From positions 172,185 through 236,184 of the IMG/VR virus record IMGVR_UViG_3300030294_000005: DNA of 64,000 nt. The stretch is one strand, 5' to 3'. Of the stretch, positions 2,585 to 61,374 are shown one piece after another. The position numbers and the translations under genes were made by a program. The notes below the pieces were generated by a model. It saw only the letters and a list, made by a program, of their open reading frames with translations, ran no database searches and was not told the origin of the DNA. Position 1 is the first letter of the stretch. Every line of letters starts with the position of its first letter.

Positions 2585-2596
2585 TATTTATATGTT
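2585..2596 (-). promoter_or_regulatory. AACA-N6-TA (AR9-type non-virion RNAP) promoter
   Basis: Minus strand AACAtataaaTA about 30 nt upstream of the ATG at 2556. Confidence 0.65.
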
Positions 2597-2627
2597 TAAG
2601 AATAAATTTGTTATATTCAAATTATTC

Positions 2628-2640
2628 AATTATATACTAT
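2628..2640 (+). promoter_or_regulatory. Putative early (virion RNAP) promoter AATTATATA(C)TAT
   Basis: One-mismatch copy of the recurrent AATTATATATTAT motif, upstream of the small ORF at 2689. Confidence 0.6.
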
Positions 2641-2688
2641 AGATATGAATAAAAAAATAATAAAAATTTTAAGGAGTTGTATTAAAAA

Positions 2689-2928
2689 ATGTTAAGCACT
2701 TTGACAGCAATAAGCAATTTAAATATATATCATGAGATTAGTCATAAAGGATCTTATGTAGACGTAGTTGTAGGAGAATGTAAAAACATAAAGATAAAAG
2801 TATTCCAAAAATTCTATAATGTATCTGTAAAAGGTAATGAAAAATGTGTAAGTAGAAATTATGCACATGATCATAATTTTGTAGAAGCAATAATAGAAAT
2901 GGAAAAACTTGCATCTATATGTTTATAA
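2689..2928 (+). CDS. small hypothetical (putative early) protein
   Basis: AAGGAG RBS; own promoter and terminator (about 2930-2956). Confidence 0.65.
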   Translation: MLSTLTAISNLNIYHEISHKGSYVDVVVGECKNIKIKVFQKFYNVSVKGNEKCVSRNYAHDHNFVEAIIEMEKLASICL

Positions 2929-2979
2929 TTAAATCAGTATGAAAAATACTGATTTATTTTTTTACATTTTTTATTTACA

Positions 2980-2991
2980 AACATATGAATA
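2980..2991 (+). promoter_or_regulatory. AACA-N6-TA promoter
   Basis: AACAtatgaaTA just upstream of the AGGAGG RBS of 3009. Confidence 0.65.
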
Positions 2992-3008
2992 AGTAAAAGG
3001 AGGTCATA

Positions 3009-4187
3009 ATGATGGAAGAAGATAAAGCAATATTAAAAGGTGTATATCCTATAATATCATCTAGTCTAGTAAAAAATACTACAAAATTTAAAAACTTAAT
3101 AGCTGGGTTCATAGAAAATCGTTCTAAAGATTTATTTGATACTGCTCCATGTAATAGACTACAATTTTTAAAAGATGATGTAGATAATTTTTATAAGGTA
3201 ATGAATATAACTGAAACTGATATAGAAGATGAGGTAAAGAAAACTTATTATTGGAAGATTGCTGATTTTAATCCAAGAGCTGCTAAAGATCCATTAACAG
3301 TAGCATTACTAAGTTGTGTAAGATATTTCTTTATAAAGAAAGATCAAAAGAATCTTGAATTAGCAATGATATATTTAGCTTTCTCTGGAAAGTTCTATCC
3401 AAGTATACATTCTGGATCATATCCAGTAGCTGCTCCTGAAGAAAACAGATATGTAATGGATTATGTTGTAAATGAAAAACTAACTAATAAATTTGATATA
3501 AAACGAGAGGGTAGTGTATTTGGAGCTATAAAAAGTATATGTTTAACATGGGTAGCTACTTATGATGATAGACTAAAATCATTTGATGATGAAGATATTG
3601 TATATTTAATACAACAACTTCATGGACGAATAAAATCATTTATGATAAATATTGCAGAAATATACTATGAGGTGTATAAGAATAAAGATAGTTATTTTGT
3701 ATATAATTCAGATAGTTTATCAGATGATAATTATCATATAGCAGATAATGATTCTTTAAAAATAGAAAGGCATGTTGAAAATACAATGTCTTATATATCA
3801 GGAACTGGTGTTGATTATAAGATATGTAAAATGTCATCTAATAGTAATGTAAAGACAGATGAGGTAAAAGAGATAATAGAAGCTGTCACCTCTAATAATA
3901 TAAATGTTGGAGAAGTAAAAGAATTAATTAGATTAATAATAACTCAATACTTCCTAATATCTAAAACTAAAGATGTAAGAGATGTTGATTTTATAACTAC
4001 GTCTATTGCAGCTAAACCAAATACTAAAGATAAGAATATACTAAGACAAAAACAAATAATAGAAAATTGGTTAGATAACAATTCTATAGCATATAGAAGA
4101 AGAAAATCTAGATTAGCGACTAAGAATAATTACTTTAAATCTATTCTCACTTACTTCACTATTCTTATTCACAATTCTAATAAATAG
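3009..4187 (+). CDS. hypothetical protein (same operon as virion RNAP beta fragment)
   Basis: 392-aa ORF with AGGAGG RBS; no recognised motif. Confidence 0.75.
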   Translation: MMEEDKAILKGVYPIISSSLVKNTTKFKNLIAGFIENRSKDLFDTAPCNRLQFLKDDVDNFYKVMNITETDIEDEVKKTYYWKIADFNPRAAKDPLTVALLSCVRYFFIKKDQKNLELAMIYLAFSGKFYPSIHSGSYPVAAPEENRYVMDYVVNEKLTNKFDIKREGSVFGAIKSICLTWVATYDDRLKSFDDEDIVYLIQQLHGRIKSFMINIAEIYYEVYKNKDSYFVYNSDSLSDDNYHIADNDSLKIERHVENTMSYISGTGVDYKICKMSSNSNVKTDEVKEIIEAVTSNNINVGEVKELIRLIITQYFLISKTKDVRDVDFITTSIAAKPNTKDKNILRQKQIIENWLDNNSIAYRRRKSRLATKNNYFKSILTYFTILIHNSNK

Positions 4188-4496: not shown

Positions 4497-4498
4497 AA

Positions 4499-5240: not shown

Positions 5241-5253
5241 AATTATATATTAT
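5241..5253 (+). promoter_or_regulatory. Putative early promoter AATTATATATTAT
   Basis: Exact motif; an AACA-N6-TA motif follows at 5306-5317. Confidence 0.6.
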
Positions 5254-5345
5254 ATAAATGATTATATATATTATATAAGCAATTATATAAATATACTATA
5301 TATATAACAATGAAATAAATAGTTTAATGAGGAGGTTGATACGAA

Positions 5346-5486
5346 ATGAACAAAACCGATGACAAACTTGGTTTTATTACTGAGGTTGGTGACCTAGGGC
5401 TTGGGTTCGATGAACTATCAAGCGAGGATAAAGACAAACTAAAAAAGATTAATACCGACAAAGAAGATAGTAAAGAGGATAAATAA
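5346..5486 (+). CDS. small acidic protein (46 aa; not in ORF track)
   Basis: GAGGAGG RBS; MNKTDDKLGFITEVGDLGLGFDELSSEDK...; AACA-N6-TA promoter at 5306-5317. Confidence 0.6.
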   Translation: MNKTDDKLGFITEVGDLGLGFDELSSEDKDKLKKINTDKEDSKEDK

Positions 5487-12406: not shown

Positions 12407-12419
12407 AATCATATATTAT
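12407..12419 (+). promoter_or_regulatory. Putative early promoter AATCATATATTAT upstream of nvRNAP beta-C
   Basis: One-mismatch motif followed by a hairpin at about 12420-12452. Confidence 0.6.
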
Positions 12420-12486
12420 ATATCTGATAGAAGTTATGAATCTATCAGATATTTACATATTCTTAGTGTGAAGGGATGATTATGAT

Positions 12487-14670
12487 ATGGCAGATCCAAG
12501 TTTAATTAATAACGTTTTAGAAGCAGGAAAAAGATTAACATCAAAAGAACAAATGTTAGGTAAAGGATTGAATATGCCTTTTAACGCTCTAAATTCAGGA
12601 GCAAGAAAAATAATGTTTTCTACACAGATGGATCATCGTGTAGATTTGTTTAACCCAGAAGCCCCATTAATAAGCACGGGGTATGAAAATAGATTTGGTG
12701 AATATACATCTTCTTTTATCAAATCTGATAGTAGATATATGGTAATTGCTAAGATAGAAAAATTCTCTCATCTTCCAGGGCATCATTATTATTTAGTGTT
12801 AAAGAAGTTTGATAGTGATGAATATGAAATTATTGAGAGAGTAATGTATGAGCATGTTACTGAAGCTTACGGATATCTATATAATACAAAATATATGGAT
12901 CATCTAAAGATTGGAAGTATAGTAGAAACTAATGATGTTATACGAAAAAGCACATCATATGATGAATATGATAATAGAATGGATGGGGTTAATTTAATAA
13001 CAACATATCTATCTAATGAAGATACAAAAGAAGATGGAATTGTAGTAGCAAGGTCTGTAACTGAAAAGTTAGCATGTCCATTAATTAAGACTATCCAAAT
13101 AATAATCAATGATAATGATATACCACTTAATATGTATGGCGATGATAATATATATAAAATAATGCCAGATATAGGAGAGAGCATAAAGAAGGGTATATTG
13201 TGTGCTATGAGAAGAGAGAAAAAAGAAGAATCATTATTTAATCAATCTCTTCAACATCTTCAATCATTAATGATGTCAGATGATAAGTTTATAGCAAAAG
13301 GACAAATTATAGATATAGATGTATACTGTAATAATCCTGAGATATTAAAAGAATCATACTATGCTACACAAATAAAATATTATAGTGATAATAGTTTTAG
13401 ATTTATGAATGATATTGTAAATGTTATTAAACCTATAATAGAAGATAATGTTAATAAGTGTAGTTATGAATTACAGAAAATATATTATGATTGTAAGAAG
13501 ATAGTAGTAGATGGGAAGAAGTATATAAAAGATAAACCATTCTCTAATACTATAATAAATATAACTATATTAGAGAAGAGTGTATTAGCAGTAGGAGATA
13601 AGATATCTAATAGATATGGTGGTAAAGGAGTAGTTTCTAAGATAAGAGAAGATGATCTAATGCCATTATTAAAAGATACAGGTGAGAGGGTTGAAGTAAT
13701 ATTTAATTCAGCAACATGTATAAATAGAGAAAATATAGGTCAATTATTTGAGACATCGCTAAACGATATATCTAATAAATTACTTCATTATATGGAGAAT
13801 GTATTAGATACAGATGAATGTAATGAGATGTATAGAGATTTGGTTTATTTAACTAATAGGGAACAAGGCGAGAAGGTAGATGAATTATTATCTAGATTAT
13901 CTCCTGAAGAACAGCATTATTTCTTTGACTCTGTAATATCAGATAGTGGCATAATGCTTAGTATGAAACCTATAAGTGATCCAATGAATATTGATATGCT
14001 GTCTGCAATATATGATAAATTTCCTTATATAAAACAGCATAAGGTAACAGTGCCACAAAGGGATTCTAATGGTAATGTAAGATATCTAGAAACTAGAAGA
14101 AGATTGACTTGTGGAAAACAATATATCTATAGATTAAAACAATATGCTGAAGAAAAGTTTAGTGCGACTTCACTTTCTTCAACAAATATAAGAAATGAAA
14201 ATAGTAGAAGCTCTGCTAAAAAATCTTATAAAACAATATTTACAAAAACTCCAATAAGATTTGGAGAAATGGAATCTGGAAACTTATTACATCTTGGTGC
14301 AGAAAATGTAGTTATTAACTTATTACTATATTCCGCATCTCCTAAAGGAAGAAGACTTGCTGAAGAATTATTAATTGGTAATCCGTTTGATATAAATGTT
14401 AAATTGGACGACCAATCTACAAATAGAGGTGTTGAAATTCTTAATGCATATTTATTAACAATGGGATTAAGAATAGAATTTGTAAAAACACAAAAAACTA
14501 AAAAAGCACCTATTAAGTTTACACCTATTATAGTTCCAGCAAATAGAACTCCAATACGATTTGTTAATCCAGATGATAAGATGATTAAAGAGTATCTAGA
14601 TAATTTTGGTAAGAAATCAAAATCACCTATTAAATTTGTTCCAATATCATTTGTAGGAAGGACTGATTAA
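12487..14670 (+). CDS. Non-virion RNA polymerase beta subunit, C-terminal half
   Basis: NSGARKIMFSTQ, EDGIVV, GDKISNRYGGKGVVS, RENIGQLFE, YIYRLKQ, PIRFGEME. Confidence 0.92.
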   Translation: MADPSLINNVLEAGKRLTSKEQMLGKGLNMPFNALNSGARKIMFSTQMDHRVDLFNPEAPLISTGYENRFGEYTSSFIKSDSRYMVIAKIEKFSHLPGHHYYLVLKKFDSDEYEIIERVMYEHVTEAYGYLYNTKYMDHLKIGSIVETNDVIRKSTSYDEYDNRMDGVNLITTYLSNEDTKEDGIVVARSVTEKLACPLIKTIQIIINDNDIPLNMYGDDNIYKIMPDIGESIKKGILCAMRREKKEESLFNQSLQHLQSLMMSDDKFIAKGQIIDIDVYCNNPEILKESYYATQIKYYSDNSFRFMNDIVNVIKPIIEDNVNKCSYELQKIYYDCKKIVVDGKKYIKDKPFSNTIINITILEKSVLAVGDKISNRYGGKGVVSKIREDDLMPLLKDTGERVEVIFNSATCINRENIGQLFETSLNDISNKLLHYMENVLDTDECNEMYRDLVYLTNREQGEKVDELLSRLSPEEQHYFFDSVISDSGIMLSMKPISDPMNIDMLSAIYDKFPYIKQHKVTVPQRDSNGNVRYLETRRRLTCGKQYIYRLKQYAEEKFSATSLSSTNIRNENSRSSAKKSYKTIFTKTPIRFGEMESGNLLHLGAENVVINLLLYSASPKGRRLAEELLIGNPFDINVKLDDQSTNRGVEILNAYLLTMGLRIEFVKTQKTKKAPIKFTPIIVPANRTPIRFVNPDDKMIKEYLDNFGKKSKSPIKFVPISFVGRTD

Positions 14671-17566: not shown

Positions 17567-17590
17567 AACATAATTATAATTATATATTAT
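17567..17590 (+). promoter_or_regulatory. Overlapping AACA-N6-TA and AATTATATATTAT promoters
   Basis: AACAtaattaTA at 17567-17578 and AATTATATATTAT at 17578-17590. Confidence 0.6.
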
Positions 17591-17631
17591 TATTATGTAT
17601 AAAAATAATATTATAAATTTCAAGGAGGAAT

Positions 17632-18228: not shown

Positions 18229-18241
18229 TAATTAAACTCGT

Positions 18242-18916
18242 ATGTTTTTGCATACGAGTTTATTTTTAATAAAAAGGTGGATGATTATATATATGGACAA
18301 AGCGAGAATAAATAATAAAATATATGATATCATTACTGATGACGAATATAAGAATAATAAGAATTTGTATGATCCTTCATTCACTGCAATAAAGAAAGAA
18401 GGAACAATATATCCGTTAAGAAAAAAGAAAGATACAAGTCCAGGGTACTATGATTTAGGAGTAATAGGATTTTATGTTTCTCCATCAGATGATGAAAAAG
18501 ATTTATATAATAGTATAAATAGTATAAACTTTTCTGACTCTAAATCTATTAAAGATATAATAGAGAAGAGTGATAACTTAAAAGAAATTGAAAAAGATAT
18601 ATTAACTACAGCAGATAATATATTTATTCCTAAGATAAAAGAAAACGATGAACCTGAAATGATTGCACTTAAGGAGTCAGTCATTTCTAAGAATATAGAC
18701 ATTGGTAATTACGAACATAGGTTTGGAGGAAAATATAATAATGATATCAGAATTTTTCAAGACAATAGTATAACTTTATTTAAGTTAAAGAAATTTGCTG
18801 ATGCATTAGACTTGAAGTGTACATTAACAATAGAAGATAAAAATCCAGATGTTGCAAATCCTATGAATAGAGCTGTGACAGTTGTATTAAACGATGGAGA
18901 TGATATTGATGAATGA
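18242..18916 (+). CDS. hypothetical protein (possible C-terminal HTH-like segment)
   Basis: Real start probably MDKAR (about 18293); ITLFKLKKFADALDL resembles the end of an Xre-type HTH. Confidence 0.6.
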   Translation: MFLHTSLFLIKRWMIIYMDKARINNKIYDIITDDEYKNNKNLYDPSFTAIKKEGTIYPLRKKKDTSPGYYDLGVIGFYVSPSDDEKDLYNSINSINFSDSKSIKDIIEKSDNLKEIEKDILTTADNIFIPKIKENDEPEMIALKESVISKNIDIGNYEHRFGGKYNNDIRIFQDNSITLFKLKKFADALDLKCTLTIEDKNPDVANPMNRAVTVVLNDGDDIDE

Positions 18917-20642
18917 TGACATAACTCAAAGAAATTTCATCAAATATTTTACTGATGAAAATAGAGAACATTTTAATGAACAATTATTTTATAGAAATGA
19001 AGATGATATAATAGAAGATATTAAGAAGGTTATATTATCATGTCAGAGAAGCAGATACTTTGTTTTAAGAGTTCATCAATTTAAAGTAGTAGATGATTAT
19101 AATGAGATTATGCAAATCTTATATAATTATGAAGAAAATCTAAATAGGAACAAGACTAAGAAGAGAGATAATCAATATGATTTTGTAGACTTAAAAGTTA
19201 CAGATATGAAATTATTGATAGTGACTTATTATATAGAAGCTAAAGAAAAATTTGAATATGTTGATGTCATTATAGCAGTTCCTAGAATAGTTAATAAGTA
19301 TTACTTTAGAATATCTGGAAATATATATTCAGCATTGTTTCAGTTAGTAGAGAGTACTTATAATAGTTCAACTTCAGCAGCTTCAAGAAAAGATAATATT
19401 ACATTAAAAACAATATTTATGCCTATTAGAATATATAGAAATAATGTATCCTTATTGACAACTTCTAATGAGGATGTAAAATGTGTATTCTATACAATAA
19501 GAGTATTTAATAAATCTTTCAATTCAGTAAAGCCATTCTTAGCAAGAGGTGGATTTTATAATGGTATGGCATATTTAGGATTGAAGTATATTTCAATAAC
19601 AGAAACAGATCCTAATGATAAAGATTTATATACTTTTGAAAAACATGGCCTATTTGTAAGTGTACCGAGATATATATTTGATAGTGATGCATATACACAA
19701 TCGTTTGTATATGGATTAATTGCCGCAATAAATAAAGAATGCACATATTCAAATATATTCTCTAAATACTATTGGCTTAAAATGTTAGGTGAAGATTTTA
19801 ATAATTCTAGTGTGGATAAAGGAGTATCAATATTAGATTCTTTAGAGTCAGTATATGATATATTGACAAAAGAAAGTCTTCATCTTCCAGAATATCAGAA
19901 ACAAAATATTTATGATATTCTAAAATGGTTATTAAGAGAATTTTCAAATCTAAAATCTAAAGATAATTTAGATGTTACTGTAAAAAGAATAAGGTTCTCA
20001 GAATATATTGCATCGCTGTATGCAATGAAACTATCTACTGGTATCTATAGAATATCGGATAATAGAAGGAAGAATATAAACATAGATAGTATAAAGAGAA
20101 TAATAAGAATACCACCTATGTATCTTATAAGTGCAATAACTAAATGTAATTTAGTAAACTATAGAAATTTGGTTAATGATTTAGATTCTACTTTAGCTTT
20201 AAAATATTCTAGAAAAGGTATTTCTGGAATGGGAGATCAGAGTAGTAAATCAGTACCTAAAATATACAGATATATAGATTCGTCTAGTATAGGTATATTT
20301 GATTTAGATGATTCACCTAAATCCGACCCAGGAATATCTGGTACAATAAGTCCATTAGTTAAATTAAGTAATTGGTCTTTTTCAGATTATAGTGAACCAA
20401 ATGAATGGGAAGCTGGATTTAAAGATTTGACAAAGAACTATAAAGCATTAGTTGGTAAGAAAGAAGTAATAACTCTTCAAAAAGAATTATTAGATATAGA
20501 AAATGAAGAGTTAGAAAATATAGTAGATGACTCTATATATGCTGTAAAAGAATTAATGTCAGCTATAAGATTTATAGAAGATGATGTTATTGAAGATACA
20601 GACATAGATCCTAATATGGTTGAAGAGGAGGATTTATTATAA
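18894..20642 (+). CDS. Non-virion RNA polymerase beta subunit, N-terminal half
   Basis: AVPRIVNKYYFRISG (cf. RpoB IP....GTFIING), KYSRKGISG, YRYIDSS..G..DLDDSPKSDPGISG (cf. RDVHP.HYGR.CP.ETPEGPNIGL). Confidence 0.82.
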   Translation: MEMILMNDDITQRNFIKYFTDENREHFNEQLFYRNEDDIIEDIKKVILSCQRSRYFVLRVHQFKVVDDYNEIMQILYNYEENLNRNKTKKRDNQYDFVDLKVTDMKLLIVTYYIEAKEKFEYVDVIIAVPRIVNKYYFRISGNIYSALFQLVESTYNSSTSAASRKDNITLKTIFMPIRIYRNNVSLLTTSNEDVKCVFYTIRVFNKSFNSVKPFLARGGFYNGMAYLGLKYISITETDPNDKDLYTFEKHGLFVSVPRYIFDSDAYTQSFVYGLIAAINKECTYSNIFSKYYWLKMLGEDFNNSSVDKGVSILDSLESVYDILTKESLHLPEYQKQNIYDILKWLLREFSNLKSKDNLDVTVKRIRFSEYIASLYAMKLSTGIYRISDNRRKNINIDSIKRIIRIPPMYLISAITKCNLVNYRNLVNDLDSTLALKYSRKGISGMGDQSSKSVPKIYRYIDSSSIGIFDLDDSPKSDPGISGTISPLVKLSNWSFSDYSEPNEWEAGFKDLTKNYKALVGKKEVITLQKELLDIENEELENIVDDSIYAVKELMSAIRFIEDDVIEDTDIDPNMVEEEDLL

Positions 20643-25156: not shown

Positions 25157-25243
25157 CTAGTATGTAAATAATACCCTCTTAATTGTCGAAAGGCATTAAT
25201 ATATATATACCGTATGGGTTCCATACGGTATATTTAATGTTGT

Positions 25244-25274
25244 TTTTAATTATATATTATAATAATGAATAAAA
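25244..25274 (+). promoter_or_regulatory. Putative early promoter, 31-bp copy 1
   Basis: ttttaattatatattataataatgaataaaa, identical to 25927-25957. Confidence 0.65.
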
Positions 25275-25926: not shown

Positions 25927-25957
25927 TTTTAATTATATATTATAATAATGAATAAAA
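25927..25957 (+). promoter_or_regulatory. Putative early promoter, 31-bp copy 2
   Basis: Identical to 25244-25274. Confidence 0.65.
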
Positions 25958-28026: not shown

Positions 28027-28116
28027 TAACCTCCCTATTTAGTCTATTATACCTTTGTTAATATTTTAAATATATATACCATATCTTGATAGTATATTAT
28101 TTTTTATTTATAGAAT

Positions 28117-28128
28117 AACATATAAATA
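28117..28128 (+). promoter_or_regulatory. AACA-N6-TA promoter upstream of DNA polymerase part 1
   Basis: AACAtataaaTA. Confidence 0.6.
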
Positions 28129-30700: not shown

Positions 30701-30712
30701 AACATAATATTA
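30701..30712 (+). promoter_or_regulatory. AACA-N6-TA promoter of portal gene
   Basis: AACAtaatatTA after the terminator at about 30652-30682. Confidence 0.7.
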
Positions 30713-35701: not shown

Positions 35702-35770
35702 AAAAATTTACCTCCTTTTTCTAACATTATTTTTTTAATTATGATATGCTTTACTCATATGTTATTTTTC

Positions 35771-36493: not shown

Positions 36494-36569
36494 ATCAATC
36501 TCTCCTTTCTTATTAAATTGTTATAATATAAAAAATATAAGAGTTCAACATACGTTGAACTCTTTTTTA

Positions 36570-39083: not shown

Positions 39084-39231
39084 CCCTTATAATTTTTTAT
39101 TAAAATCTTATATTATATATAAGATATTATATTTTTAAAATATTAATGAATTAATACCCTCCCTTTATATTATTCTTGTGTTATGTATGATATAAAAAAC
39201 TATTATAGGGGTTACCCTATAATAGTATTGA

Positions 39232-43437: not shown

Positions 43438-43528
43438 ATTAAACTCACCTCCTATATTATTTATATGTTTAAGCTAATAAAAGAGATGAATACAATTAAA
43501 TAATATATATTTATAATTTTAACAAAAT

Positions 43529-43560: not shown

Positions 43561-43705
43561 GATAATAATATAATATCGTAAAAATCTACCCCCTGAGTTT
43601 TTTAATAACATTCAAATTTCTAATTTATTAAATATATAATTTATAATAAATAATTTAAATTAATTTTATGTTATGTGGACAATCTATTTTAAATATAAAA
43701 AATAA

Positions 43706-48937: not shown

Positions 48938-49411
48938 TTATATCATTATTTCAATGTTAAGAGTTAAAGAAGATATATTCACATTATTATTTAGAATATT
49001 TATTCTAAATATATCTTTTATATCTACAATATCATTTGATAACGTATAGGTTTGTTTACTTGGATCATTATTTAAAGTTAATTTTTCAGATAATATGCTA
49101 GTCCAAGTATTTAACAGTCTATCTGATTCACTCGCCTTCTCTACATCAATAATTATATCATCAGTTGTAGCAGCTTTATATATAGCATATATAGATTTTA
49201 TTTTTCCACCATATATAAATTGGCATTCATAATCTTGTACCCCTTGTCCTACATCTTTAAGAACAAAGTATATAACTTTAGATGCTACAGTATCTATTTT
49301 ATCTTTTATGCTTATAATTTCTGTGCCATCATATGATACATTTTTAGCATCCATTAATTTAAATTTACCATTATTCTTTTGAATTATTTTTGAAATTACT
49401 GGTATAGCCAA
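48938..49411 (-). CDS. tail fibre-associated protein (paralog of 50945..51163 N-terminus)
   Basis: MAIPVISKI.QKNN..FKLMDAKNVSYDGTE shared. Confidence 0.65.
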   Translation of the reverse strand: MAIPVISKIIQKNNGKFKLMDAKNVSYDGTEIISIKDKIDTVASKVIYFVLKDVGQGVQDYECQFIYGGKIKSIYAIYKAATTDDIIIDVEKASESDRLLNTWTSILSEKLTLNNDPSKQTYTLSNDIVDIKDIFRINILNNNVNISSLTLNIEIMI

Positions 49412-51179: not shown

Positions 51180-52613
51180 TTAAGCAATATTTATAGTTGT
51201 TGAACCTAATCCAGCATTATCAGATCTGTATATATCATAGCTTTCAGTAAATCCATTTGCATTTGTAAATTGAATAGTACTTACTAATCCTAATCCACCT
51301 TCAAAGCCACCAACAGTAAATGTAATAGCTCCCAATCTAGATGGAATACAATAATAGATATAATCTGTTTCACCAGCAGCGTTAACATTTATTGTTCTTC
51401 CTTTTGTATCACTTAATACTTTTGTTAAAGATTTTACAAGAGTATTATCATAACTTACTGATGAAGAAACTCCATAATAAATTCCATTAAAGAATTTAAT
51501 ACTTGCTGTTGATGTTTTAACACTACTATCTGGTGCAACAGCCGATAATGTAAATGTTTTATTAGTTGATACAGGGGTAGTATAAGTTTTAGTTCTCAAA
51601 GCATTATCTAATGTTGTTCCTTCAAATTGTTGTGATGTTGGTACACCACCAGCATAACTCCATGTAAAGATAATAGAATTAATAATAGTTCCAGCTTCAG
51701 CTATAGATACGTTTGCAACTAAACTAGCTGTAAATGGAGTAGAAGGAATACCACCTATTATTATTAATATAGATGCTATTTGAGTTCTTATATAATTCAA
51801 TTGTGAATTAAGATCAGTTATAGCTGATCCATCAGCTTTGTTACCTATAGTTGCTACCGCATTTTTATCATCTATAGTATAATCATTAGCTGAAAGACCT
51901 TTCCCAGCTACTTTATCAACCTTGTTACCTATAGTTGCTACTGCATTTTTATCTTGGGTTGCATAATCATTAGTTGAAAGACCTTTTCCAGCTACTTTAT
52001 CAACCTTATTTTCAATATTAACATCAACAGTAATACCATCTATAAGTTCTTGTAATGCTGCAATATCGGCTTGATTTGGAATAGCTATTACTCCAGTAGC
52101 TCCACCAACATATAAACGTTTTTCATCATTAACTACTGCAGGCTCACCTACTGCTAATGTAGGAAGATCAGCTTTTGCCCCTCTTCTAAATTTAATAGTA
52201 GCACCTGTTTTATCAGTAAATACTTTACCATCAACTAATGTTACTGTACCTCCACCACCACCACCATTATTAGCAATGTATGTTTTGATAGCATTACCAG
52301 TTACAAGACCTGGAGAATCCTTAGCATCCAATATACCTGATATAAATGGAAAAGAATCTGGTTTACCATTATATGGATCTGGAATAGGATCTTCTCCTGT
52401 AGTATTATCTTTTTTATAATTAGATAGAGTTAATTTTAGTCTTTTATCAGCACTTAATATTTCTAATACCGTAGCCTTTTCTAATATACAAGAAAGTATA
52501 TCTTCTAGAGATAGTCTTATTGAAAATACAGAACTATATATAGGCTTTGATAAATTTCTTAACTGCTTATCAGTTATTACATCTACATTTTTATAAATAA
52601 TAACAGCACTCAT
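51180..52613 (-). CDS. tail fibre protein (Mtd/hyaluronidase-like N-terminal motif, KVDK repeats)
   Basis: IKFRRGAKADLPTLAVGEPA, two KVDKVAGKGLS.NDY repeats; AACA-N6-TA at 52639-52650 (-). Confidence 0.7.
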   Translation of the reverse strand: MSAVIIYKNVDVITDKQLRNLSKPIYSSVFSIRLSLEDILSCILEKATVLEILSADKRLKLTLSNYKKDNTTGEDPIPDPYNGKPDSFPFISGILDAKDSPGLVTGNAIKTYIANNGGGGGGTVTLVDGKVFTDKTGATIKFRRGAKADLPTLAVGEPAVVNDEKRLYVGGATGVIAIPNQADIAALQELIDGITVDVNIENKVDKVAGKGLSTNDYATQDKNAVATIGNKVDKVAGKGLSANDYTIDDKNAVATIGNKADGSAITDLNSQLNYIRTQIASILIIIGGIPSTPFTASLVANVSIAEAGTIINSIIFTWSYAGGVPTSQQFEGTTLDNALRTKTYTTPVSTNKTFTLSAVAPDSSVKTSTASIKFFNGIYYGVSSSVSYDNTLVKSLTKVLSDTKGRTINVNAAGETDYIYYCIPSRLGAITFTVGGFEGGLGLVSTIQFTNANGFTESYDIYRSDNAGLGSTTINIA

Positions 52614-52711
52614 TAATATTACACCTCCTATTTGTTTTTATATATTTGTTAAAACATATTTGACAAAAAGGCAAAATAACTGTAGAGTTAACTACAGTTA
52701 TTTATTTTAAA

Positions 52712-55394: not shown

Positions 55395-55955
55395 TTACAA
55401 AATAATTTGATCATTAAAATATTTATTAGATAAGACTTCTACAGGAATAAATATTATTCTAAATGGAATATCTATACCTAATATGTAATCAGTTCTATCT
55501 TGTAATGAATTGAAAATTTTAATGTATATATCTTCTTTAAGATTAAAATCTTTTATAAAAGATTCTTTCTGTATTTTTTCTTTATTTAAATTATAATAAA
55601 GAGTTTTTGTAGATATTATTAGTGCACTTTTTAGTTCAAAATCCTCTAGCTTTTTTATAGTTTCTAATCTTACTTTTTTGCCATACTCTTCATCAACATA
55701 TTTTATACAAGCCATTTTATAATAATCTTCTTCAGCAATTGATACCATATCATCAATCAAACCTTCTAACAGCAATTTATAAAATACTATAGGAGTATGG
55801 ACATAAATCTCTGCAACATTAACGCCATTAAAAGATATAACCTTATACTCTTTTTCAATTTCTTCATTAATACCATAACTATGATTTATTTCTTTAATCC
55901 GCTGTCCTAACCCTTCTATTTTTACATACTGTTCAATTTCCATCATATTAATCAA
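55395..55955 (-). CDS. hypothetical (putative early) protein
   Basis: AAGGAG RBS; GATTATATATTAT at 55991-56003 (-). Confidence 0.65.
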   Translation of the reverse strand: MINMMEIEQYVKIEGLGQRIKEINHSYGINEEIEKEYKVISFNGVNVAEIYVHTPIVFYKLLLEGLIDDMVSIAEEDYYKMACIKYVDEEYGKKVRLETIKKLEDFELKSALIISTKTLYYNLNKEKIQKESFIKDFNLKEDIYIKIFNSLQDRTDYILGIDIPFRIIFIPVEVLSNKYFNDQIIL

Positions 55956-56074
55956 TCTCCTTTATAATAATATATTTTATTTACATTATTATAATATATA
56001 ATCATTATATTTATTAATTATAAAAAATAAAAAATCAGAGTAATAGCAATTAGCTATTACTCTATTAATTTGTT

Positions 56075-56488
56075 TTACTTTCTAAAGAAAGCTACAGGTA
56101 GTTTTTGTTTTAAATAAGCCTTCTGGCCTAACTTAGCAGCTTGAGTTGCTTTCATACTATACTTAGCAGTTATCTTTTCTAATAGTTCTCTTTCTTTAAT
56201 TCTATTCTTAGTTAATTGAGTGAATAGAATATCATCACTATCTTTAGCTAACTGTAATGCAGCCATTTTCAATCTTCTTGATAAATCATCCTCTTTGGAT
56301 AATCTTACAAGAGTCTTTCTAGAAATGATTCCACCCTCTTCTAAAGCTACAGCTTCTTGAGATTCTAAGAATTCTTTCTTTCTTTCATCTGGAAGTCTTG
56401 AAAGTTCATCATATATATAGCTTTCTGTTAATTCATTTGGATTCTTTAAATCATTCGTCATTGATCCAGTAGCACCGAAAATATTCAT
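56075..56488 (-). CDS. hypothetical late protein (possibly virion-internal)
   Basis: Strong RBS, own AACA-N6-TA (56519-56530) and terminator (about 56037-56063). Confidence 0.7.
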   Translation of the reverse strand: MNIFGATGSMTNDLKNPNELTESYIYDELSRLPDERKKEFLESQEAVALEEGGIISRKTLVRLSKEDDLSRRLKMAALQLAKDSDDILFTQLTKNRIKERELLEKITAKYSMKATQAAKLGQKAYLKQKLPVAFFRK

Positions 56489-56558
56489 ATTAATATTCCT
56501 CCTTAAATTTTAGTATATTAATATGATGTTATTTTATATAAAGAAAAATACATTTATA

Positions 56559-56978: not shown

Positions 56979-57731
56979 TTATTTAAATTTAATTGTTCCA
57001 TCTTCATATTGTACACAATAATCAGCAGTTAATACTTGTTTCCATTTCTCTTTGCTATTCTTTAATTTATTAAATTCAAATACATATACATTATCTGCTG
57101 CCCATTCACATAAATCATCTAAAGTTAAAAATACTGAAGATATAGGCTGCTCTAATTCCCATAATTGATAACCATCTCCTATTGGCGGATCATATTGTTT
57201 ACATTCATCATATAATTTTCTAATTTCATCAGAATACCACGCTTCACCTTCTCCATCACAATAAGAGCATATTCCAAATACTCCAAGTCTCATTGCCCTA
57301 GTTTTTACACAAATTATTCTATTAGTCGTGTCATGTCCAAATCCTATTTTTGCCCAAACATTAACTTCATTTGCAGTTGGTATATAACCATTATTAAAAG
57401 GTAACCAAGAATTTCCACCTTCTTTAATTTTTTGTTTTATAATTTCTTTTTGTTCATTATTTATTGCAACTCTAGTAAAATCCCATAATCTATTTGCATT
57501 TAATAATGCTTGAACTTCGTCTTGTTCTAAATTATATTGCCATCCTTCTATAATCTTACCATTATCAGAATAGGTATACCACTCTTTATTTAATTTCATA
57601 GTTGCTTCATTAAATCCTGATCCATTACACGCTTTACATTCTATACTTTTATATGGATTTATATAACCTTTCCAAGTTTGGTTTAATGGATATTTAAAAT
57701 CCATTGGAACTCTTTTTAATGATTTTCCCAT
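56979..57731 (-). CDS. hypothetical protein with split DnaJ-type Zn finger
   Basis: CKACNGSG ... CSYCDGEG; AATTATATATTAT at 57769-57781 (-). Confidence 0.65.
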   Translation of the reverse strand: MGKSLKRVPMDFKYPLNQTWKGYINPYKSIECKACNGSGFNEATMKLNKEWYTYSDNGKIIEGWQYNLEQDEVQALLNANRLWDFTRVAINNEQKEIIKQKIKEGGNSWLPFNNGYIPTANEVNVWAKIGFGHDTTNRIICVKTRAMRLGVFGICSYCDGEGEAWYSDEIRKLYDECKQYDPPIGDGYQLWELEQPISSVFLTLDDLCEWAADNVYVFEFNKLKNSKEKWKQVLTADYCVQYEDGTIKFK

Positions 57732-57845
57732 TTATATTTCCTCCTTTATTTTTATTTTATTCATTTCTATAATATATAATTAAAATAGATATTAGTAAAA
57801 AAATATATAATTCACAACATTAAAATAAAGAAAAGTATTAGGAGT

Positions 57846-58274
57846 GTGTTATATATGAAGAATATGGAAGATTTAGAGATTGTTAAAAGGTATAAAGATA
57901 CTGCTACTAGAATGATACATTTATCTTTTCCAACATTATCTAGTGTAGAATTGAATGATGCTATCAACTATTCTATTTTAAAAAGATGTAAAAACTCAGA
58001 AGCTATTATAGAGAATAATTATCAAAATAAAAATATAAATACTACAGTATTAGAAATGGCAGAATACATACTTACTAGAGAACCAATAATTACAGCATTT
58101 GGAGTTTTATTTAAGAAGCATGGAACAGTGCCTAACCCTCTAGCAAAGATGATTCAATCATTTATGGATGGTAGAGGAATTCATAAAAATGAGATGTTTA
58201 AATATCCAAAAGGATCAGAAGAGTTTGAAAAATATAATTTATTACAATTACTAGATAAATTAGATGCTAACGCT
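57846..58274 (+). CDS. Split family-B DNA polymerase part 2, exon 1
   Basis: Ends [10 protein letters not shown], the first half of motif B (K...N..YG); AACA-N6-TA at 57816-57827. Confidence 0.85.
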
Positions 58275-59567
58275 TAAATATGAGGTGCGTTATACAGTAA
58301 TGTATAATTGAAAACTCTGTGAACTGCTGGGAGTCCCTAAGAGCTTAATATACTACAACGTGATCTGTAAAGATGAGCGTGAATGTGGTCGAAAGACAGA
58401 AAGAAATATTAAGATAAGGTATGGTGAGAATCCTAACTCTTATAAACAATGGGTAATCATAGCAGCCAAGCTGCCAATTATAATAAAAGATGATATATCA
58501 CTAACTTTATATTTATTAAGAGGTGATATTAATGAAAATTATTAGTTTTTTAAATAAAGAAGACGAAATGCCTATATATTGGTATAAATTAAACTGTGAT
58601 AATATTAAGGATAATTTATATGAAATATCAGAAACATCTGAAATTAGATCTGCTAAAACAAAGAAAATATTAAAACAAAGAAATCATAAATCTAGAAGTA
58701 GTAGTTATAAAGACATAGCATTAAGTACAAATATTATTAAAGGTAAAAGTTTTTTAGTTCATAGATTAGTAGCTAAAACTTTCATTCCTAATCCATACAA
58801 TAAACCTGAAGTAAATCATAAAAATTATGATACAAAGAAAAACTATTGTGATAATTTAGAATGGATGACACATAAAGAAAATGTAGAATATTCTAAAAAT
58901 AATATAAAAAGAGGAGAAGATAATATAAATTCATCTTTAACAAATGATCAGGTTTATAAAATATGTAATATGCTACAAGAAAATAAATCTTATAGTGAAA
59001 TATTATTTAATATAGGAATGGAAGATAGTGATAATAATAGAGATACTGTAGGTAATATTAAACGAGGTATAACTTATAAAAATATATCTAAACAATTTAA
59101 CTTATCTAATGCTAATGCAAAATCTTCTAAATATGATATAAATACAATTAGAGATATATGTAGATATATATTTAATGGATATGACTATATAAAAATAGCA
59201 GAATTAATAAATGAGGATATTTCAGATATAAATAAAAAGAAATCATTTTATGAATTTATTCGTCTTATTAAAAATAGAAAAAATTATAAAGATATATCAT
59301 CTGAATATAATTGGTAGAAGGTTCAACGACTATCGAAAGCTATAAATCCATAAGAACTATTAATTTAGCAGGGTTGAAAATAAGGTATAGTAATGTATAC
59401 ACGAAGTGAGTAGAGTACACTAGAAGTCTAGTGGAAGTGCAGAGCGTCCTAGTAAAATAGGATGAAGATATAGTCTCTTCTTCGTATGAAAGTACGAGCA
59501 TTCTAAATAAATGATATATAGTGAGAGTATAATATTCATTATACAACGACTATATAGTAAGATTAAG
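58275..59567 (+). mobile_element. Group I self-splicing intron in DNA polymerase motif B
   Basis: 5' exon ends in U and pairs aacgcu/ggugcguu (P1); core elements gaactgctggga, gttcaacgacta (59321) and gaagatatagtct (59464); terminal G at 59567; splicing restores KLDANA|LYGSIG in frame. Confidence 0.9.
58532..59317 (+). CDS. Intron-encoded HNH homing endonuclease (NUMOD4/HNH type)
   Basis: YEISETSEIRS, VHRLVAKTFIPNP, VNHKN..KKN...NLEWMT..EN; GAGGTG RBS. Confidence 0.9.
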   Translation: MKIISFLNKEDEMPIYWYKLNCDNIKDNLYEISETSEIRSAKTKKILKQRNHKSRSSSYKDIALSTNIIKGKSFLVHRLVAKTFIPNPYNKPEVNHKNYDTKKNYCDNLEWMTHKENVEYSKNNIKRGEDNINSSLTNDQVYKICNMLQENKSYSEILFNIGMEDSDNNRDTVGNIKRGITYKNISKQFNLSNANAKSSKYDINTIRDICRYIFNGYDYIKIAELINEDISDINKKKSFYEFIRLIKNRKNYKDISSEYNW

Positions 59568-61241
59568 TTATATGGATCAATTGGTCAAGTATCTTGCTTA
59601 TATTATAATGTTAATATTGCATCATCTGTTACAGTTCAAGGTAGATCATGTATATCAACAGCAATGCTTCAATTTGAAATGTTTCTAGCAAATAATTCTA
59701 ATTTTGGATCTCTTAATGAAGTAATTACATTTATAGATAATATAGTTACTGAAAAAAGAGAATATTCTGATAGATTAATATTAGATAATGATATAACTAT
59801 GACTGAAAGTTTTAATAAGGTAATGATGACTTGTGGATTTGATTATATACCATCAGAGGAAGATCTATTAATAGTATGGGAAATATTTGGTAGATTAAAA
59901 CAAGAAGACTGGAATAGATTATATTATAAGAATAATCTATATGATTTTGTAAATAATAGATCTATGACAAATGCATTAATTTATATATTAACAGAATTAC
60001 ATGAACCATTCTTAGATCCAAATGATGTACCATCAGAAATAAAAGTAGAGTTAGATGAATTTTTATCATTTCTAAAAGAATACGTTTATTATTCATATCA
60101 GATAATAGATAGATTAGATAAAGCAGAAAATATGATAAGAAAAGTAGTAGCTCTAGGAGATACTGATTCAAATATAGTTTCATTAGATGCATGGTATAGA
60201 TTTACATTAGATAAAGTAGTGGACATACCAATGGCTATTAAAAAGAAAAAATTAAAAGCAATTTCTTTTTTAGAAACTGATGAATTCGGAGATTCTGATA
60301 AATTAAAAGTAATAGATTTTGTTGAAGATGATAGAGATTATGATTTTAAGAATGATGAGATTATAAGTATTCATAAAAGTATGAATGTATTAAGTATTAT
60401 CCCTCAAGAAGGAGTAAGATATTCTATAATAAATATTATGGCATATTGTCTATATAAATTAATTAATGACTACATGTGTAAATATACACAGAATTCTAAT
60501 TCATATGATCCAAAGAAAAAATGTTTACTTATTATGAAAAACGAATATTTATTTAAACGTGTATTATTAACCCTTGCTAAGAAGAATTATGCAACAATTC
60601 AAGAATTACAAGAAGGTAAATTCTTAAATGGATTATTAGATATAAAAGGATTGCCTATAGCTAAAACTACATTAAATATTAAGACTCAAGAAAAGCTACA
60701 AGAGATTTTATTTGAAGATGTATTAAATTCAGATGAGATAGATCAATTAAGAGTTTTAAAAGATTTAGCTAAAGTAGAGAAAGAAATATTTGATTCTTTA
60801 TTAAGTAAGAATAAAGAATATTATAAACCATTAACTATAAAGTCTATGAATAGTTATGATGATCCATTTAGATTAAGTGGAATAAAAGCAAGTTATGTTT
60901 GGAATGTATTAAGATATGATAATATAGCAGCTATTGATTTAGAAGTTAGAAATAATATAGATGTTATAAAAGTTGATATAACTCAAAAGAATGTAGAAAA
61001 GATAAAAGAATTATATCCAGATGTTTATGATAAAATAATACCATTACTTAAAGAAAAACCTTTTATAAAAGGAATAACAGCAATGGCAGTCCCAAAGAAT
61101 AGCGAGTTACCAGATTGGACATTAGAGTTTATAGATTATCCAACAATAATAAATGATAATCTTAAGAACTTTCCATTAGAGTCTATTGGATTATGTAAAA
61201 TGAATGATACAAATAATTATAGTAATATATTAAAACTATAA
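59568..61241 (+). CDS. Split family-B DNA polymerase part 2, exon 2
   Basis: LYGSIG, VTVQGR, motif C GDTDS, MKNEY, KKNYA, IKGL. Confidence 0.9.
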   Translation, partial: LYGSIGQVSCLYYNVNIASSVTVQGRSCISTAMLQFEMFLANNSNFGSLNEVITFIDNIVTEKREYSDRLILDNDITMTESFNKVMMTCGFDYIPSEEDLLIVWEIFGRLKQEDWNRLYYKNNLYDFVNNRSMTNALIYILTELHEPFLDPNDVPSEIKVELDEFLSFLKEYVYYSYQIIDRLDKAENMIRKVVALGDTDSNIVSLDAWYRFTLDKVVDIPMAIKKKKLKAISFLETDEFGDSDKLKVIDFVEDDRDYDFKNDEIISIHKSMNVLSIIPQEGVRYSIINIMAYCLYKLINDYMCKYTQNSNSYDPKKKCLLIMKNEYLFKRVLLTLAKKNYATIQELQEGKFLNGLLDIKGLPIAKTTLNIKTQEKLQEILFEDVLNSDEIDQLRVLKDLAKVEKEIFDSLLSKNKEYYKPLTIKSMNSYDDPFRLSGIKASYVWNVLRYDNIAAIDLEVRNNIDVIKVDITQKNVEKIKELYPDVYDKIIPLLKEKPFIKGITAMAVPKNSELPDWTLEFIDYPTIINDNLKNFPLESIGLCKMNDTNNYSNILKL

Positions 61242-61246
61242 AAAAT

Positions 61247-61272
61247 AAAGCTGAGATTAATTTCTCAGCTTT
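61247..61272 (+). terminator. Terminator after DNA polymerase part 2
   Basis: aaagctgaga-ttaatt-tctcagcttt. Confidence 0.65.
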
Positions 61273-61374
61273 AATTATGCTATTATAAAAAGTTTTTTAT
61301 AAATATAAACAATCCTTCTAGGAACATAGAAAAAGTATTTCTATTTTAACATTATAATAGGGGGGTGATATTTT

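What the first reader, a model, noticed from the sequence alone, without database searches (positions are those of the whole stretch)
2585..61359. AR9-type AACA-N6-TA promoters throughout: hint of a uracil-substituted genome
Exact AACA-N6-TA occurs in intergenic positions at 2585(-), 2980, 5306, 17567, 28048(-), 28117, 30701, 35752(-), 36511(-), 39171(-), 43458(-), 43661(-), 52639(-), 56519(-), 57816 and 61348, plus one just inside a gene end at 48947(-). Most lie upstream of portal, sheath, terminase, fibre and polymerase genes. This matches the consensus known for the Bacillus phage AR9 non-virion RNAP, which reads the template strand and depends on deoxyuridines there. Inference: this phage uses the same promoter logic and may carry dU instead of dT.
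Basis: partly seen in the sequence, partly recalled or inferred. Interest (0 to 1): 0.7.

Follow-up and report, generated by a model that had tools for sequence, protein, structure and literature searches.

The report
AR9-type promoters, but thymine DNA
This uncultivated 236-kb peat phage uses the same two promoter types and the same phage-encoded RNA polymerases as Bacillus phage AR9, but its genes point to ordinary thymine DNA, so this promoter system does not by itself signal a uracil genome.

Summary
All 17 AACA-N6-TA sites exist. The window total is below chance (65 vs 93). The signal is intergenic: 20 hits in 4.8 kb against 7.5±2.7. Genome-wide, gaps upstream of genes hold 71 correctly oriented hits against 14.9±3.6. 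Only the N6 spacing is enriched, and most sites end 20-29 nt before a start codon. AR9 run through the same script gives 73.

A second motif, ATTATATATTAT-N6-G, matches AR9's early promoter. It precedes the non-virion RNA polymerase genes. The late motif precedes the virion RNA polymerase, capsid, portal, sheath, terminase and endolysin genes.

A true gp226 homologue exists. Its family profile hits only PDB 7S01 chain A (E 1.7e-55). The gene is interrupted by a 589-nt intron-like insert.

The uracil inference fails.
- The genome encodes ThyX, dCTP deaminase and a dTMP kinase-like protein.
- It has no dCMP deaminase and no convincing Ugi.
- AR9, S6, LPJP1 and phiR1-37 show the opposite pattern.
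- 13 of 14 near-complete relatives carry ThyX or ThyA, never both.
- The uracil-discriminating valine, gp226 V206, is proline here and varies freely across the clade.

Verdict: promoter logic supported, dU not. This is a new variant of a known system. No transcript or base-composition data exist.

The parts
2585..2596 (-). late-type promoter candidate AACATATAAATA, 28 nt before gene 1225-2556(-), an AR9 g051-like protease
2980..2991 (+). late-type promoter candidate, 17 nt before gene 3009-4187 (AR9 g052-like)
5306..5317 (+). late-type promoter candidate, 28 nt before small ORF 5346-5486
17567..17578 (+). late-type motif abutting an early core at 17579 (tandem late and early), heading the unit 17638-20642 that contains nvRNAP beta-N
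28048..28059 (-). late-type promoter candidate, 21 nt before gene 27091-28026(-)
28117..28128 (+). late-type promoter candidate, 43 nt before DNA polymerase part 28172-30091 (AR9 g132-like)
30701..30712 (+). late-type promoter candidate, 24 nt before the portal homologue 30737-32995 (AR9 g128-like)
35752..35763 (-). late-type promoter candidate, 50 nt before tail sheath 33869-35701(-)
36511..36522 (-). late-type promoter candidate, 17 nt before virion protein 35771-36493(-) (AR9 g125-like)
39171..39182 (-). late-type motif, 99 nt before gene 38298-39071(-); weaker placement
43458..43469 (-). late-type promoter candidate, 20 nt before terminase large subunit 41305-43437(-)
43661..43672 (-). late-type motif 223 nt before the terminase start; weak placement
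48947..48958 (-). late-type motif inside the 3' end of gene 48938-49411(-), 28 nt before gene 47896-48918(-)
52639..52650 (-). late-type promoter candidate, 25 nt before gene 51180-52613(-), which has weak minor-head and tail-fibre family matches
56519..56530 (-). late-type promoter candidate, 30 nt before gene 56075-56488(-)
57816..57827 (+). late-type promoter candidate, 27 nt before exon 1 (57855-58277) of the DNA polymerase catalytic subunit (AR9 g152-like)
61348..61359 (+). late-type motif with no gene within 258 nt, followed by GG; unassigned and possibly non-functional
2629..2647 (+). early-type (vRNAP) promoter candidate: core with 1 mismatch, then N6, then G
5242..5260 (+). early-type promoter candidate ATTATATATTAT-N6-G
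12408..12426 (+). early-type promoter candidate (1 mismatch) upstream of nvRNAP beta-C
17579..17597 (+). early-type promoter candidate heading the unit that holds nvRNAP beta-N
25249..25267 (+). early-type promoter candidate before gene 25300-25692
25932..25950 (+). early-type promoter candidate before gene 26018-26476
55984..56002 (-). early-type promoter candidate (core 55991-56002) before gene 55395-55946(-)
57762..57780 (-). early-type promoter candidate (core 57769-57780) before gene 56979-57731(-)
61563..61581 (+). early-type promoter candidate heading the unit 61618-63975 that holds nvRNAP beta'-C
12613..14670 (+). nvRNAP beta C-terminal subunit (AR9 g089 homologue, 34% identity; the ORF could start at 12487)
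18909..20642 (+). nvRNAP beta N-terminal subunit (AR9 g105 homologue). R363 equivalent conserved; K375 equivalent is S in a pairwise alignment
61909..63975 (+). nvRNAP beta' C-terminal subunit (AR9 g154 homologue)

Best explanation
The window belongs to a near-complete, 236-kb, 26% G+C jumbo phage assembled from peat metagenomes. It is a distant relative of the AR9/PBS1, S6, LPJP1 and phiR1-37 lineage.

The motif (T)AACA-N6-TAA marks promoters for the phage's own non-virion RNA polymerase (nvRNAP). That enzyme has four split beta/beta' subunits and a gp226-type specificity subunit. By homology with AR9, transcription should start at the A of TA, giving leaders of about 20-30 nt.

A second motif, tAATTATATATTAT-N6-G, marks early promoters for the injected virion RNA polymerase (vRNAP). 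Early promoters drive the nvRNAP genes. Late promoters drive the vRNAP, structural, lysis and several replication genes. This is the AR9 cascade.

Unlike AR9, the DNA most likely contains thymine. The phage carries a dCTP deaminase, ThyX and dTMP kinase-like route to dTTP. Its gp226 homologue lacks the valine that excludes 5-methyl at position -10. The polymerase therefore probably reads 3'-TTGT-5' where AR9 reads 3'-UUGU-5'.

Shown: motif statistics, gene content, homology, residue variation. Inferred: start sites, which strand is read, and the base composition of the DNA.
For: Motif:
- Oriented upstream gaps hold 71 hits against 14.9±3.6. Enrichment is specific to N6, and distances peak at 20-29 nt.
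- It is the top non-Shine-Dalgarno dyad in an unbiased scan.
- AR9 gives 73 with the same script.
- No -35 conservation is seen. AR9 late promoters also lack it (PMC9209446).
- AR9 late consensus AACA-(6N)-TA/G with the last base as start site, and early consensus AAATATATATTAT-(6N)-G, are published (PMC5312081).

Early motif: 28 of 29 exact ATTATATATTAT copies in the genome lie in oriented upstream gaps, with G six bases downstream.

Machinery:
- Homologues of AR9 g089, g105, g154 and g270 (nvRNAP) and of g145, g189 and g264 (vRNAP) are present.
- The gp226-family profile hits only 7S01_A, E 1.7e-55, over residues 10-462.
- Synteny GroEL, g227, g226 is kept.

Logic: nvRNAP genes and the gp226-like gene lie behind early motifs. 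vRNAP genes, major capsid protein, portal, sheath, terminase and endolysin lie behind late motifs.

Thymine:
- ThyX scores 101 against a cut-off of 87.9 and keeps the GHxS-LEH, RHR...SQRY and HA-EIR motifs.
- dCTP deaminase scores 94.6 against 92.8; a dTMP kinase-like protein is present.
- No dCMP deaminase, dUTPase or ThyA.
- The dU phages show the reverse pattern.
- Of 14 near-complete relatives, 10 have ThyX and 3 have ThyA, never both. Two unrelated enzymes with the same activity replacing one another argues that dTMP synthesis is the selected function.
- The dU phages have SD-x-V-I-W. Here the segment is KNP-IW, and the position is hypervariable in the clade.
- The relatives' loci also show N6-specific enrichment, 104 against 27-39.
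Against: - No transcript data exist for this phage, so no start site is mapped.
- No chemical data on the DNA exist; thymine is inferred from genes only.
- dCTP deaminase is also the enzyme activity reported for PBS2 dUTP supply (from my own knowledge, not checked here). A Tmk-like kinase could in principle phosphorylate dUMP.
- No phage dUTPase was found to turn dUTP into the dUMP that ThyX needs.
- The ThyX carries a ~130-aa insertion and an N-terminal extension, so an altered activity is not excluded.
- The genome has homologues of all six proteins proposed as exclusive to uracil-DNA phages (PMC10303552).
- Proline keeps a C-beta, so V206P alone does not prove thymine tolerance. One ThyX-positive relative has valine there.
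- Y210, which stacks on -9G in AR9, is K here. The beta-N K375 equivalent is S in a pairwise alignment. The recognition chemistry may therefore differ from AR9 in ways not predictable from sequence.
Confidence: 0.7

Rival explanations
1. One reading: AR9-type late promoters in a genome that carries deoxyuridine instead of thymidine, with uracil-dependent template-strand recognition.
For: - The promoter consensus and gp226-type polymerase are the same as in AR9.
- The G+C content is 26%, low like the known uracil-DNA phages (PMC8460666).
- A dCTP deaminase is present and no dUTPase.
- Homologues of the six proteins listed as exclusive to uracil-DNA phages are present.
- I207, W208 and beta-N R363, which flank the -10 base pocket in AR9, are conserved.
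Against: - An apparently functional ThyX and a dTMP kinase-like protein are present.
- There is no dCMP deaminase, which all four dU phages tested carry.
- 13 of 14 relatives keep ThyX or ThyA.
- The V206 equivalent is not conserved.
- There is no convincing Ugi: best match 9 bits, lacking the E-S-I motif.
- The genome was assembled from many ordinary metagenome libraries, whereas LPJP1 uracil DNA failed standard library preparation (PMC8460666). This last point is weak, because the library chemistry is unknown.
Confidence: 0.12
2. The DNA carries neither plain T nor U. It carries a thymidine derivative, such as 5-hydroxymethyl-dU or a hypermodified T, made through the unusually long ThyX-like enzyme. 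The promoter system reads that base.
For: - The ThyX is 408 aa, with an insertion of about 130 aa. Relatives have reading frames of 386-488 aa.
- One relative lacks both ThyX and ThyA.
Against: - The ThyX catalytic motifs are canonical and the protein passes the equivalog cut-off.
- ThyA replaces ThyX in three relatives.
- No modification genes were seen next to ThyX or Tmk in the ten neighbouring proteins scanned.
Confidence: 0.08
3. The motif is real but is not read by the gp226-type polymerase. It could be a host sigma-factor promoter element, a vRNAP element or a post-transcriptional signal in the leader.
For: No start site or binding data exist. The 2.1bis helix differs from AR9 at V206 and Y210.
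Against: - The letters, spacing and distance to genes are identical to the mapped AR9 nvRNAP promoters (PMC5312081).
- There is no -35-like conservation.
- A separate long AT-rich motif already fits the vRNAP.
- The motif precedes vRNAP and structural genes, while nvRNAP genes carry the other motif.
Confidence: 0.07
4. Chance matches in AT-rich intergenic DNA.
For: The window total is below the shuffle expectation. The motif is short and AT-rich.
Against: - The enrichment is about 15 standard deviations in oriented gaps (71 against 14.9±3.6).
- Spacing, orientation and position are all specific.
- The motif was recovered de novo.
- The enrichment is shared by relatives.
Confidence: 0.02

Closest known systems
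Bacillus phage AR9/PBS1 late promoters read by the five-subunit non-virion RNA polymerase (gp105, gp089, gp270, gp154, gp226)
   Same: - Consensus AACA-N6-TA, with similar counts (71 here, 73 in AR9) and similar leader lengths.
- No -35 element.
- All five subunit genes are present.
- GroEL, g227, g226 synteny is kept.
- Early promoters drive the nvRNAP genes; late promoters drive the vRNAP and structural genes.
   Different: - The TG start variant is almost absent: 1 here against 15 in AR9.
- The base after TA is A in 82% of sites; AR9 prefers T.
- gp226 V206 is P with a one-residue shorter loop, and Y210 is K.
- The genome encodes ThyX, a Tmk-like protein and DCD, and lacks dCMP deaminase and Ugi.
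- Protein identities to AR9 are only 25-35%.
AR9 early promoters for the virion RNA polymerase, AAATATATATTAT-(6N)-G
   Same: The core ATATATTAT and a G exactly six bases downstream are shared. The motif occurs almost only in oriented upstream gaps, before small early genes and the nvRNAP genes (PMC5312081).
   Different: The upstream part reads tAATT rather than AAAT. The initial transcribed region is conserved as aTGaAtAAA.
Uracil-DNA jumbo phages S6, LPJP1 and phiR1-37 (gp226 orthologues with conserved V206)
   Same: Same lineage: split RNA polymerases, a gp226 family member and homologues of AR9 g212, g218, g227, g242/g261 and g260.
   Different: Those phages have dCMP deaminase and none of ThyX, ThyA, Tmk or DCD. 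Their gp226 carries the invariant D-x-V-I-W segment.
phiKZ non-virion RNA polymerase with gp68
   Same: It is a phage multisubunit polymerase with a sigma-like fifth subunit that works on thymine DNA (PMC9209446).
   Different: Its late promoter is TATG, and it is not read through an AACA element. gp68 has no detectable sequence similarity to this protein. Here the only PDB match is AR9 gp226.

Membership tests
AR9-type nvRNAP late promoter | Consensus AACA-N6-TA/G upstream of non-early genes, with fixed six-base spacing | tested here: met
   71 sense hits against 14.9±3.6. Only N6 is enriched. It is the top non-Shine-Dalgarno dyad. AR9 control.
AR9-type nvRNAP late promoter | The last base of the motif is the transcription start site | not testable with these tools
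   No RNA run holds this phage. Only the 20-29 nt distance to start codons is consistent.
AR9-type nvRNAP late promoter | Recognition by a five-subunit polymerase that includes a gp226 homologue | tested here: met
   The genes for all five subunits are present. Binding itself was not tested.
AR9-type nvRNAP late promoter | Uracil required at template positions -11 and -10 | tested here: not met
   Tested only through proxies. The V206 equivalent is Pro and hypervariable in the clade. A thymidylate synthesis route is encoded. The biochemistry is untested.
gp226 promoter-specificity subunit family | Full-length sequence homology to AR9 gp226 | tested here: met
   The family profile hits 7S01_A only, E 1.7e-55, residues 10-462. 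The spliced 495-aa product is collinear with unsplit homologues.
gp226 promoter-specificity subunit family | Conserved 2.1bis helix with an invariant valine (V206), as in the close orthologues | tested here: not met
   KNP-IW here against SD-x-V-I-W in the dU phages. I207 and W208 are kept; Y210 is K.
Uracil-DNA phages (PBS1/AR9, S6, LPJP1, phiR1-37) | dU replaces dT in virion DNA | not testable with these tools
   This is a metagenomic assembly, and sequence reads do not distinguish U from T.
Uracil-DNA phages (PBS1/AR9, S6, LPJP1, phiR1-37) | No thymidylate synthase or dTMP kinase; dCMP deaminase present (the pattern seen in all four tested) | tested here: not met
   ThyX and a Tmk-like protein are present, and dCMP deaminase is absent. 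The four dU phages show the reverse.
Uracil-DNA phages (PBS1/AR9, S6, LPJP1, phiR1-37) | Ugi-type uracil-DNA glycosylase inhibitor (Bacillus members only) | tested here: not met
   The best match is 9 bits, E 0.02 within the proteome, and lacks the E-S-I motif. This is not decisive, because most dU phages lack a recognisable Ugi (PMC10303552).
Uracil-DNA phages (PBS1/AR9, S6, LPJP1, phiR1-37) | Homologues of the six proteins reported as exclusive to uracil-DNA phages | tested here: met
   All six were found, E 1e-7 to 1e-48. Given the ThyX content, they look like lineage markers rather than uracil markers.
AR9-type vRNAP early promoter | Long AT-rich core ATATATTAT with a G start six bases downstream, before early genes | tested here: met
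   Start sites are not mapped.

The most novel reading that the evidence does not exclude
A large, uncultivated clade of AR9-like jumbo phages runs the gp226-type AACA-N6-TA promoter system on ordinary thymine DNA. The clade comprises 289 clusters of gp226 homologues at 50% identity and at least 14 near-complete genomes of 208-264 kb. On this reading, uracil dependence is a specialisation of the AR9, S6 and phiR1-37 branch, or was lost here, and is not intrinsic to the mechanism. The natural variation at the V206 position (P, T, A, G, R, K, E, M, L, V) would be a ready-made series of U/T-specificity variants.
Probability: 0.6. Interest if true: 0.65.

Novelty: new variant of a known kind. Interest (0 to 1): 0.55.

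Why it matters
AR9's non-virion polymerase is the only RNA polymerase known to read a promoter in the template strand. Its promoter recognition has so far been discussed together with uracil DNA, including in a 2026 review (PMC13282480). In the papers searched I found no description of gp226-type phages with thymidylate synthases.

If this clade uses the same consensus and a homologous specificity subunit on thymine DNA, three things follow.
- The promoter motif cannot be used to predict uracil genomes.
- The question of how the -10/-11 pocket excludes or admits the 5-methyl group becomes testable with natural variants.
- The origin of uracil dependence, ancestral or derived, becomes addressable.

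For annotation, the two motifs give a promoter map and temporal classes for this phage. They should help with its relatives, whose sampled loci carry the late motif.

Tried and rejected
- Megablast of 8 kb against the phage collection found nothing. The phage has no close cultured relative.
- tblastn and the genome search with AR9 gp226 missed the homologue. Only phmmer at full sensitivity found it, and the family profile then confirmed it.
- The search for related loci failed with the single protein and with the 36-sequence alignment. A 9-sequence alignment worked.
- Two run searches found only peat DNA metagenomes and no RNA run holding the phage. Start sites could not be mapped, and read laying was not used.
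- Rfam on the spacer in the gp226-like gene gave nothing at E ≤ 1 in the 3.5-kb search, and only a weak RF00028 match (14 bits, E 0.52) in the narrow search. The class of this intervening sequence remains unproven.
- Searches for Ugi, AR9 dCMP deaminase, the 5'(3')-deoxyribonucleotidase, UDG, dUTPase and ThyA in the genome were all negative or insignificant.
- A six-taxon tree of nvRNAP beta-C did not resolve whether this phage branches outside or inside the uracil-DNA group. No direction of change, gain or loss of uracil, is claimed.
- The six 'uracil-DNA-exclusive' proteins were considered as a discriminator and rejected, because all are present here beside ThyX.
- Structure prediction, fold search and complex prediction were not run. 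The profile-to-PDB match already settled homology, and the tools return no pocket geometry that could decide U against T.

Full report
**What the window is**

The window is the last 64 kb of a single 236,184-bp contig.
- The contig has 26% G+C, and its start is repeated about 125 bp before its end.
- IMG/VR-type metadata give it 95% estimated completeness.
- Sampled words from a 6-kb stretch of it occur in contigs of 19 listed peat metagenome runs, ten of them holding more than half the words. No RNA run holds it.
- It has no near relative among sequenced phages at the DNA level.
- Its polymerase beta-C and terminase proteins are closest to Bacillus phages AR9/PBS1, the Staphylococcus S6 group, Listeria LPJP1 and Yersinia phiR1-37. 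Identities are 25-37%.

**The observation**

The window as a whole holds fewer matches than dinucleotide shuffles do: 65 against 92.7±9.7. The claim therefore rests entirely on where the matches lie. I called 284 genes on the whole genome with a simple ORF and ribosome-binding-site procedure, giving 91.6% coding.
- The intergenic 8.4% of the genome holds 85 matches against 32.5±5.4 in shuffles. That is five times the density in coding DNA.
- In the window, 20 of the 65 matches are fully intergenic against 7.5±2.7 expected.
- In 177 upstream gaps read in the direction of the downstream gene (19,057 nt), there are 71 matches against 14.9±3.6. The antisense count is 27.
- Spacings N2 to N10 other than N6 give 8-30.
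- 71 of the 121 AACA tetramers in these gaps are followed by N6-TA.
- The motif ends 20-29 nt before the start codon in 30 of 68 in-gap cases.
- The base after TA is A in 70 of 85 sites, and nothing is conserved around -35.
- With the second motif masked, a blind scan of every 4-mer/gap/2-mer pattern ranks AACA-N6-TA first after the Shine-Dalgarno patterns: 68 against 13.5.
- As a positive control, AR9, whose late promoters were mapped by dRNA-seq (PMC5312081), gives 73 at N6 against 7-30 at other spacings in the same script. Its distances peak at 20-39 nt.

**A second motif and the division of labour**

K-mer counting in the same gaps revealed a second motif, tAATTATATATTAT, followed after six bases by G.
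- 28 of the 29 exact ATTATATATTAT copies in the genome lie in oriented upstream gaps.
- AR9's early, virion-polymerase promoter is AAATATATATTAT-(6N)-G with G as the start (PMC5312081), so core and geometry are shared.
- By this scan, 58 genes carry only the late motif, 33 only the early motif and 13 both.
- Early-only genes are mostly small. They include the gp226-like gene and nvRNAP beta-C.
- The units holding nvRNAP beta-N, beta'-N and beta'-C start with an early motif. The first two of these also carry a late motif upstream.
- Late-motif genes include the vRNAP subunits (AR9 g145, g189 and g264 homologues). They also include the major capsid protein, portal, sheath, terminase, several virion proteins, the endolysin, two helicases and both parts of the DNA polymerase.

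This is the AR9 cascade.

**The specificity subunit**

AR9 gp226 finds two adjacent ORFs only with phmmer at full sensitivity.
- Genome 23681-24616 aligns to gp226 residues 29-292.
- Genome 25239-25757 aligns to residues 325-460.
- A search of 1.84 billion representative proteins with the N-terminal piece found 289 clusters, most about 500 aa long and unsplit.
- A profile of 36 of these hits one PDB sequence only: AR9 gp226 (7S01 chain A), E 1.7e-55, over residues 10-462.
- Removing 589 nt (genome 24608-25196) restores a 495-aa frame that aligns without a gap to the unsplit homologues. The 5' exon ends in U and the insert ends in G.
- Rfam support for a group I intron there is weak: 14 bits, E 0.52.
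- The order GroEL, g227-like, gp226-like matches AR9 g228, g227, g226.

**Uracil or thymine**

In AR9, thymine at template positions -11 or -10 inactivates the promoter.
- The C-beta of gp226 V206 lies 3.9 Å from C5 of the -10 uracil.
- The V206G mutant accepts T.
- The valine is absolutely conserved in close gp226 homologues of uracil-DNA phages (PMC9209446).

My alignment reproduces this. AR9, LPJP1, S6 and phiR1-37 read SDVVIW, KDKVIW, NDRVIW and SDQVIW.
- This phage reads KNP-IW: proline in place of V206, with a loop one residue shorter. I207 and W208 are kept.
- Y210, which stacks on -9G in AR9, is K here.
- Across the metagenomic family the position takes V, G, T, K, P, I, L, M, A and others.
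- In 31 IMG/VR relatives it is P, T, L, E, A, V, R, K, M or G.

Nucleotide-metabolism genes point the same way.
- ThyX is present (PF02511 at 106 bits; TIGR02170 at 101 against a cut-off of 87.9). Its GHxS-LEH, RHR...SQRY and HA-EIR motifs align to M. tuberculosis ThyX.
- A dCTP deaminase is present (TIGR02274 at 94.6 against 92.8), and a dTMP kinase-like protein lies close to ThyX.
- No ThyA, dUTPase, dCMP deaminase or UDG was found.
- AR9, S6, LPJP1 and phiR1-37 each have a dCMP deaminase and none of ThyX, ThyA, Tmk or DCD.
- Among 14 relatives of 208-264 kb, 10 have ThyX, 3 have ThyA (never both) and 1 has neither. Two have a dCMP deaminase.
- The same relatives' loci show N6-specific enrichment of the late motif: 104 against 27-39.

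Replacement of ThyX by the unrelated ThyA argues that dTMP synthesis is the function being kept.

**Caveats**

- dCTP deaminase could also supply dUTP.
- No dUTPase is encoded.
- The ThyX carries an insertion of about 130 aa.
- All six proteins proposed as exclusive to uracil-DNA phages (PMC10303552) have homologues here. I read these as markers of the wider lineage.
- No transcript ends and no base analysis exist for this phage.
- The beta-C tree does not resolve whether this phage lies outside the uracil group.

**Conclusion**

The motif sites are best read as late promoters of an AR9-type two-polymerase cascade. The step from these promoters to a uracil genome is not supported, and gene content argues against it.
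- My probability that the motif marks promoters of the gp226-type polymerase is about 0.85.
- My probability that the DNA carries T, or at least not U, is about 0.8.
- The joint probability is about 0.7.

This is a new variant of a known system, found in a large uncultivated clade.

Noticed in passing
window 57855-61241: The DNA polymerase catalytic subunit (AR9 g152-like) is in two pieces, 57855-58277 and 59511-61241. Between them lie an HNH/NUMOD4 endonuclease ORF (58532-59317) and a group I intron match at 59357-59498 (RF00028, 33 bits, E 2.3e-6). This is probably a group I intron carrying a homing endonuclease.
   Followed up: partly
genome 24608-25196 (L008:1909-2497), outside the window: A 589-nt intervening sequence splits the gp226-like gene. 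Virtual removal restores a 495-aa frame collinear with unsplit homologues. Two other relatives (L029, L045/L046) appear to carry insertions at other positions in the same gene.
   Followed up: partly
L014 (Listeria phage LPJP1, MZ422438.1 about 216553-217827): The LPJP1 gp226 homologue has an in-frame TAA near the equivalent of residue 322, at the boundary between the N- and C-terminal domains. It reads as two ORFs of 382 and 157 codons.
   Followed up: no
window 17567-17597; also genome 166478-166508: A late motif directly abuts an early core (AACA-N6-TA followed at once by ATTATATATTAT). These composite tandem promoters resemble AR9's continuously expressed genes, which have both promoter types.
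   Followed up: partly
window 61242-61617: A 376-nt gap holds a late motif (61348, +), a reverse-oriented match (61501, -) and an early motif (61563, +), but has no called gene, tRNA or Rfam family behind the late motif.
   Followed up: partly
genome 106760-107986(-): The ThyX is 408 aa, with an N-terminal extension and an insertion of about 130 aa between profile positions ~63 and ~53-187. Relatives have reading frames of 386-488 aa. The function of the extra sequence is unknown.
   Followed up: partly
genome 53519-57097(+): A 1,192-aa protein behind a late motif combines acetyltransferase-like and enoyl-CoA hydratase-like regions. It lies directly upstream of the dCTP deaminase gene.
   Followed up: no
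genome 26398-26700(+): A 100-aa acidic protein (pI 4.7) shows a faint resemblance to the first 33 residues of Ugi (9 bits, E 0.02 within the proteome) but lacks the E-S-I motif. It is not accepted as a Ugi.
   Followed up: yes
window 1-64000: GC and AT skew follow gene orientation: positive over the plus-strand blocks 1-33 kb and 58-64 kb, negative over the minus-strand block 33-57.7 kb. AACA-N6-TA is depleted in coding DNA relative to shuffles.
   Followed up: no
window 52712-55042(-): The ribonucleotide reductase large subunit carries a C-terminal TSCPD domain. To my knowledge this fits a B12-dependent class II enzyme, whereas AR9 has class Ib NrdEF plus NrdI.
   Followed up: no
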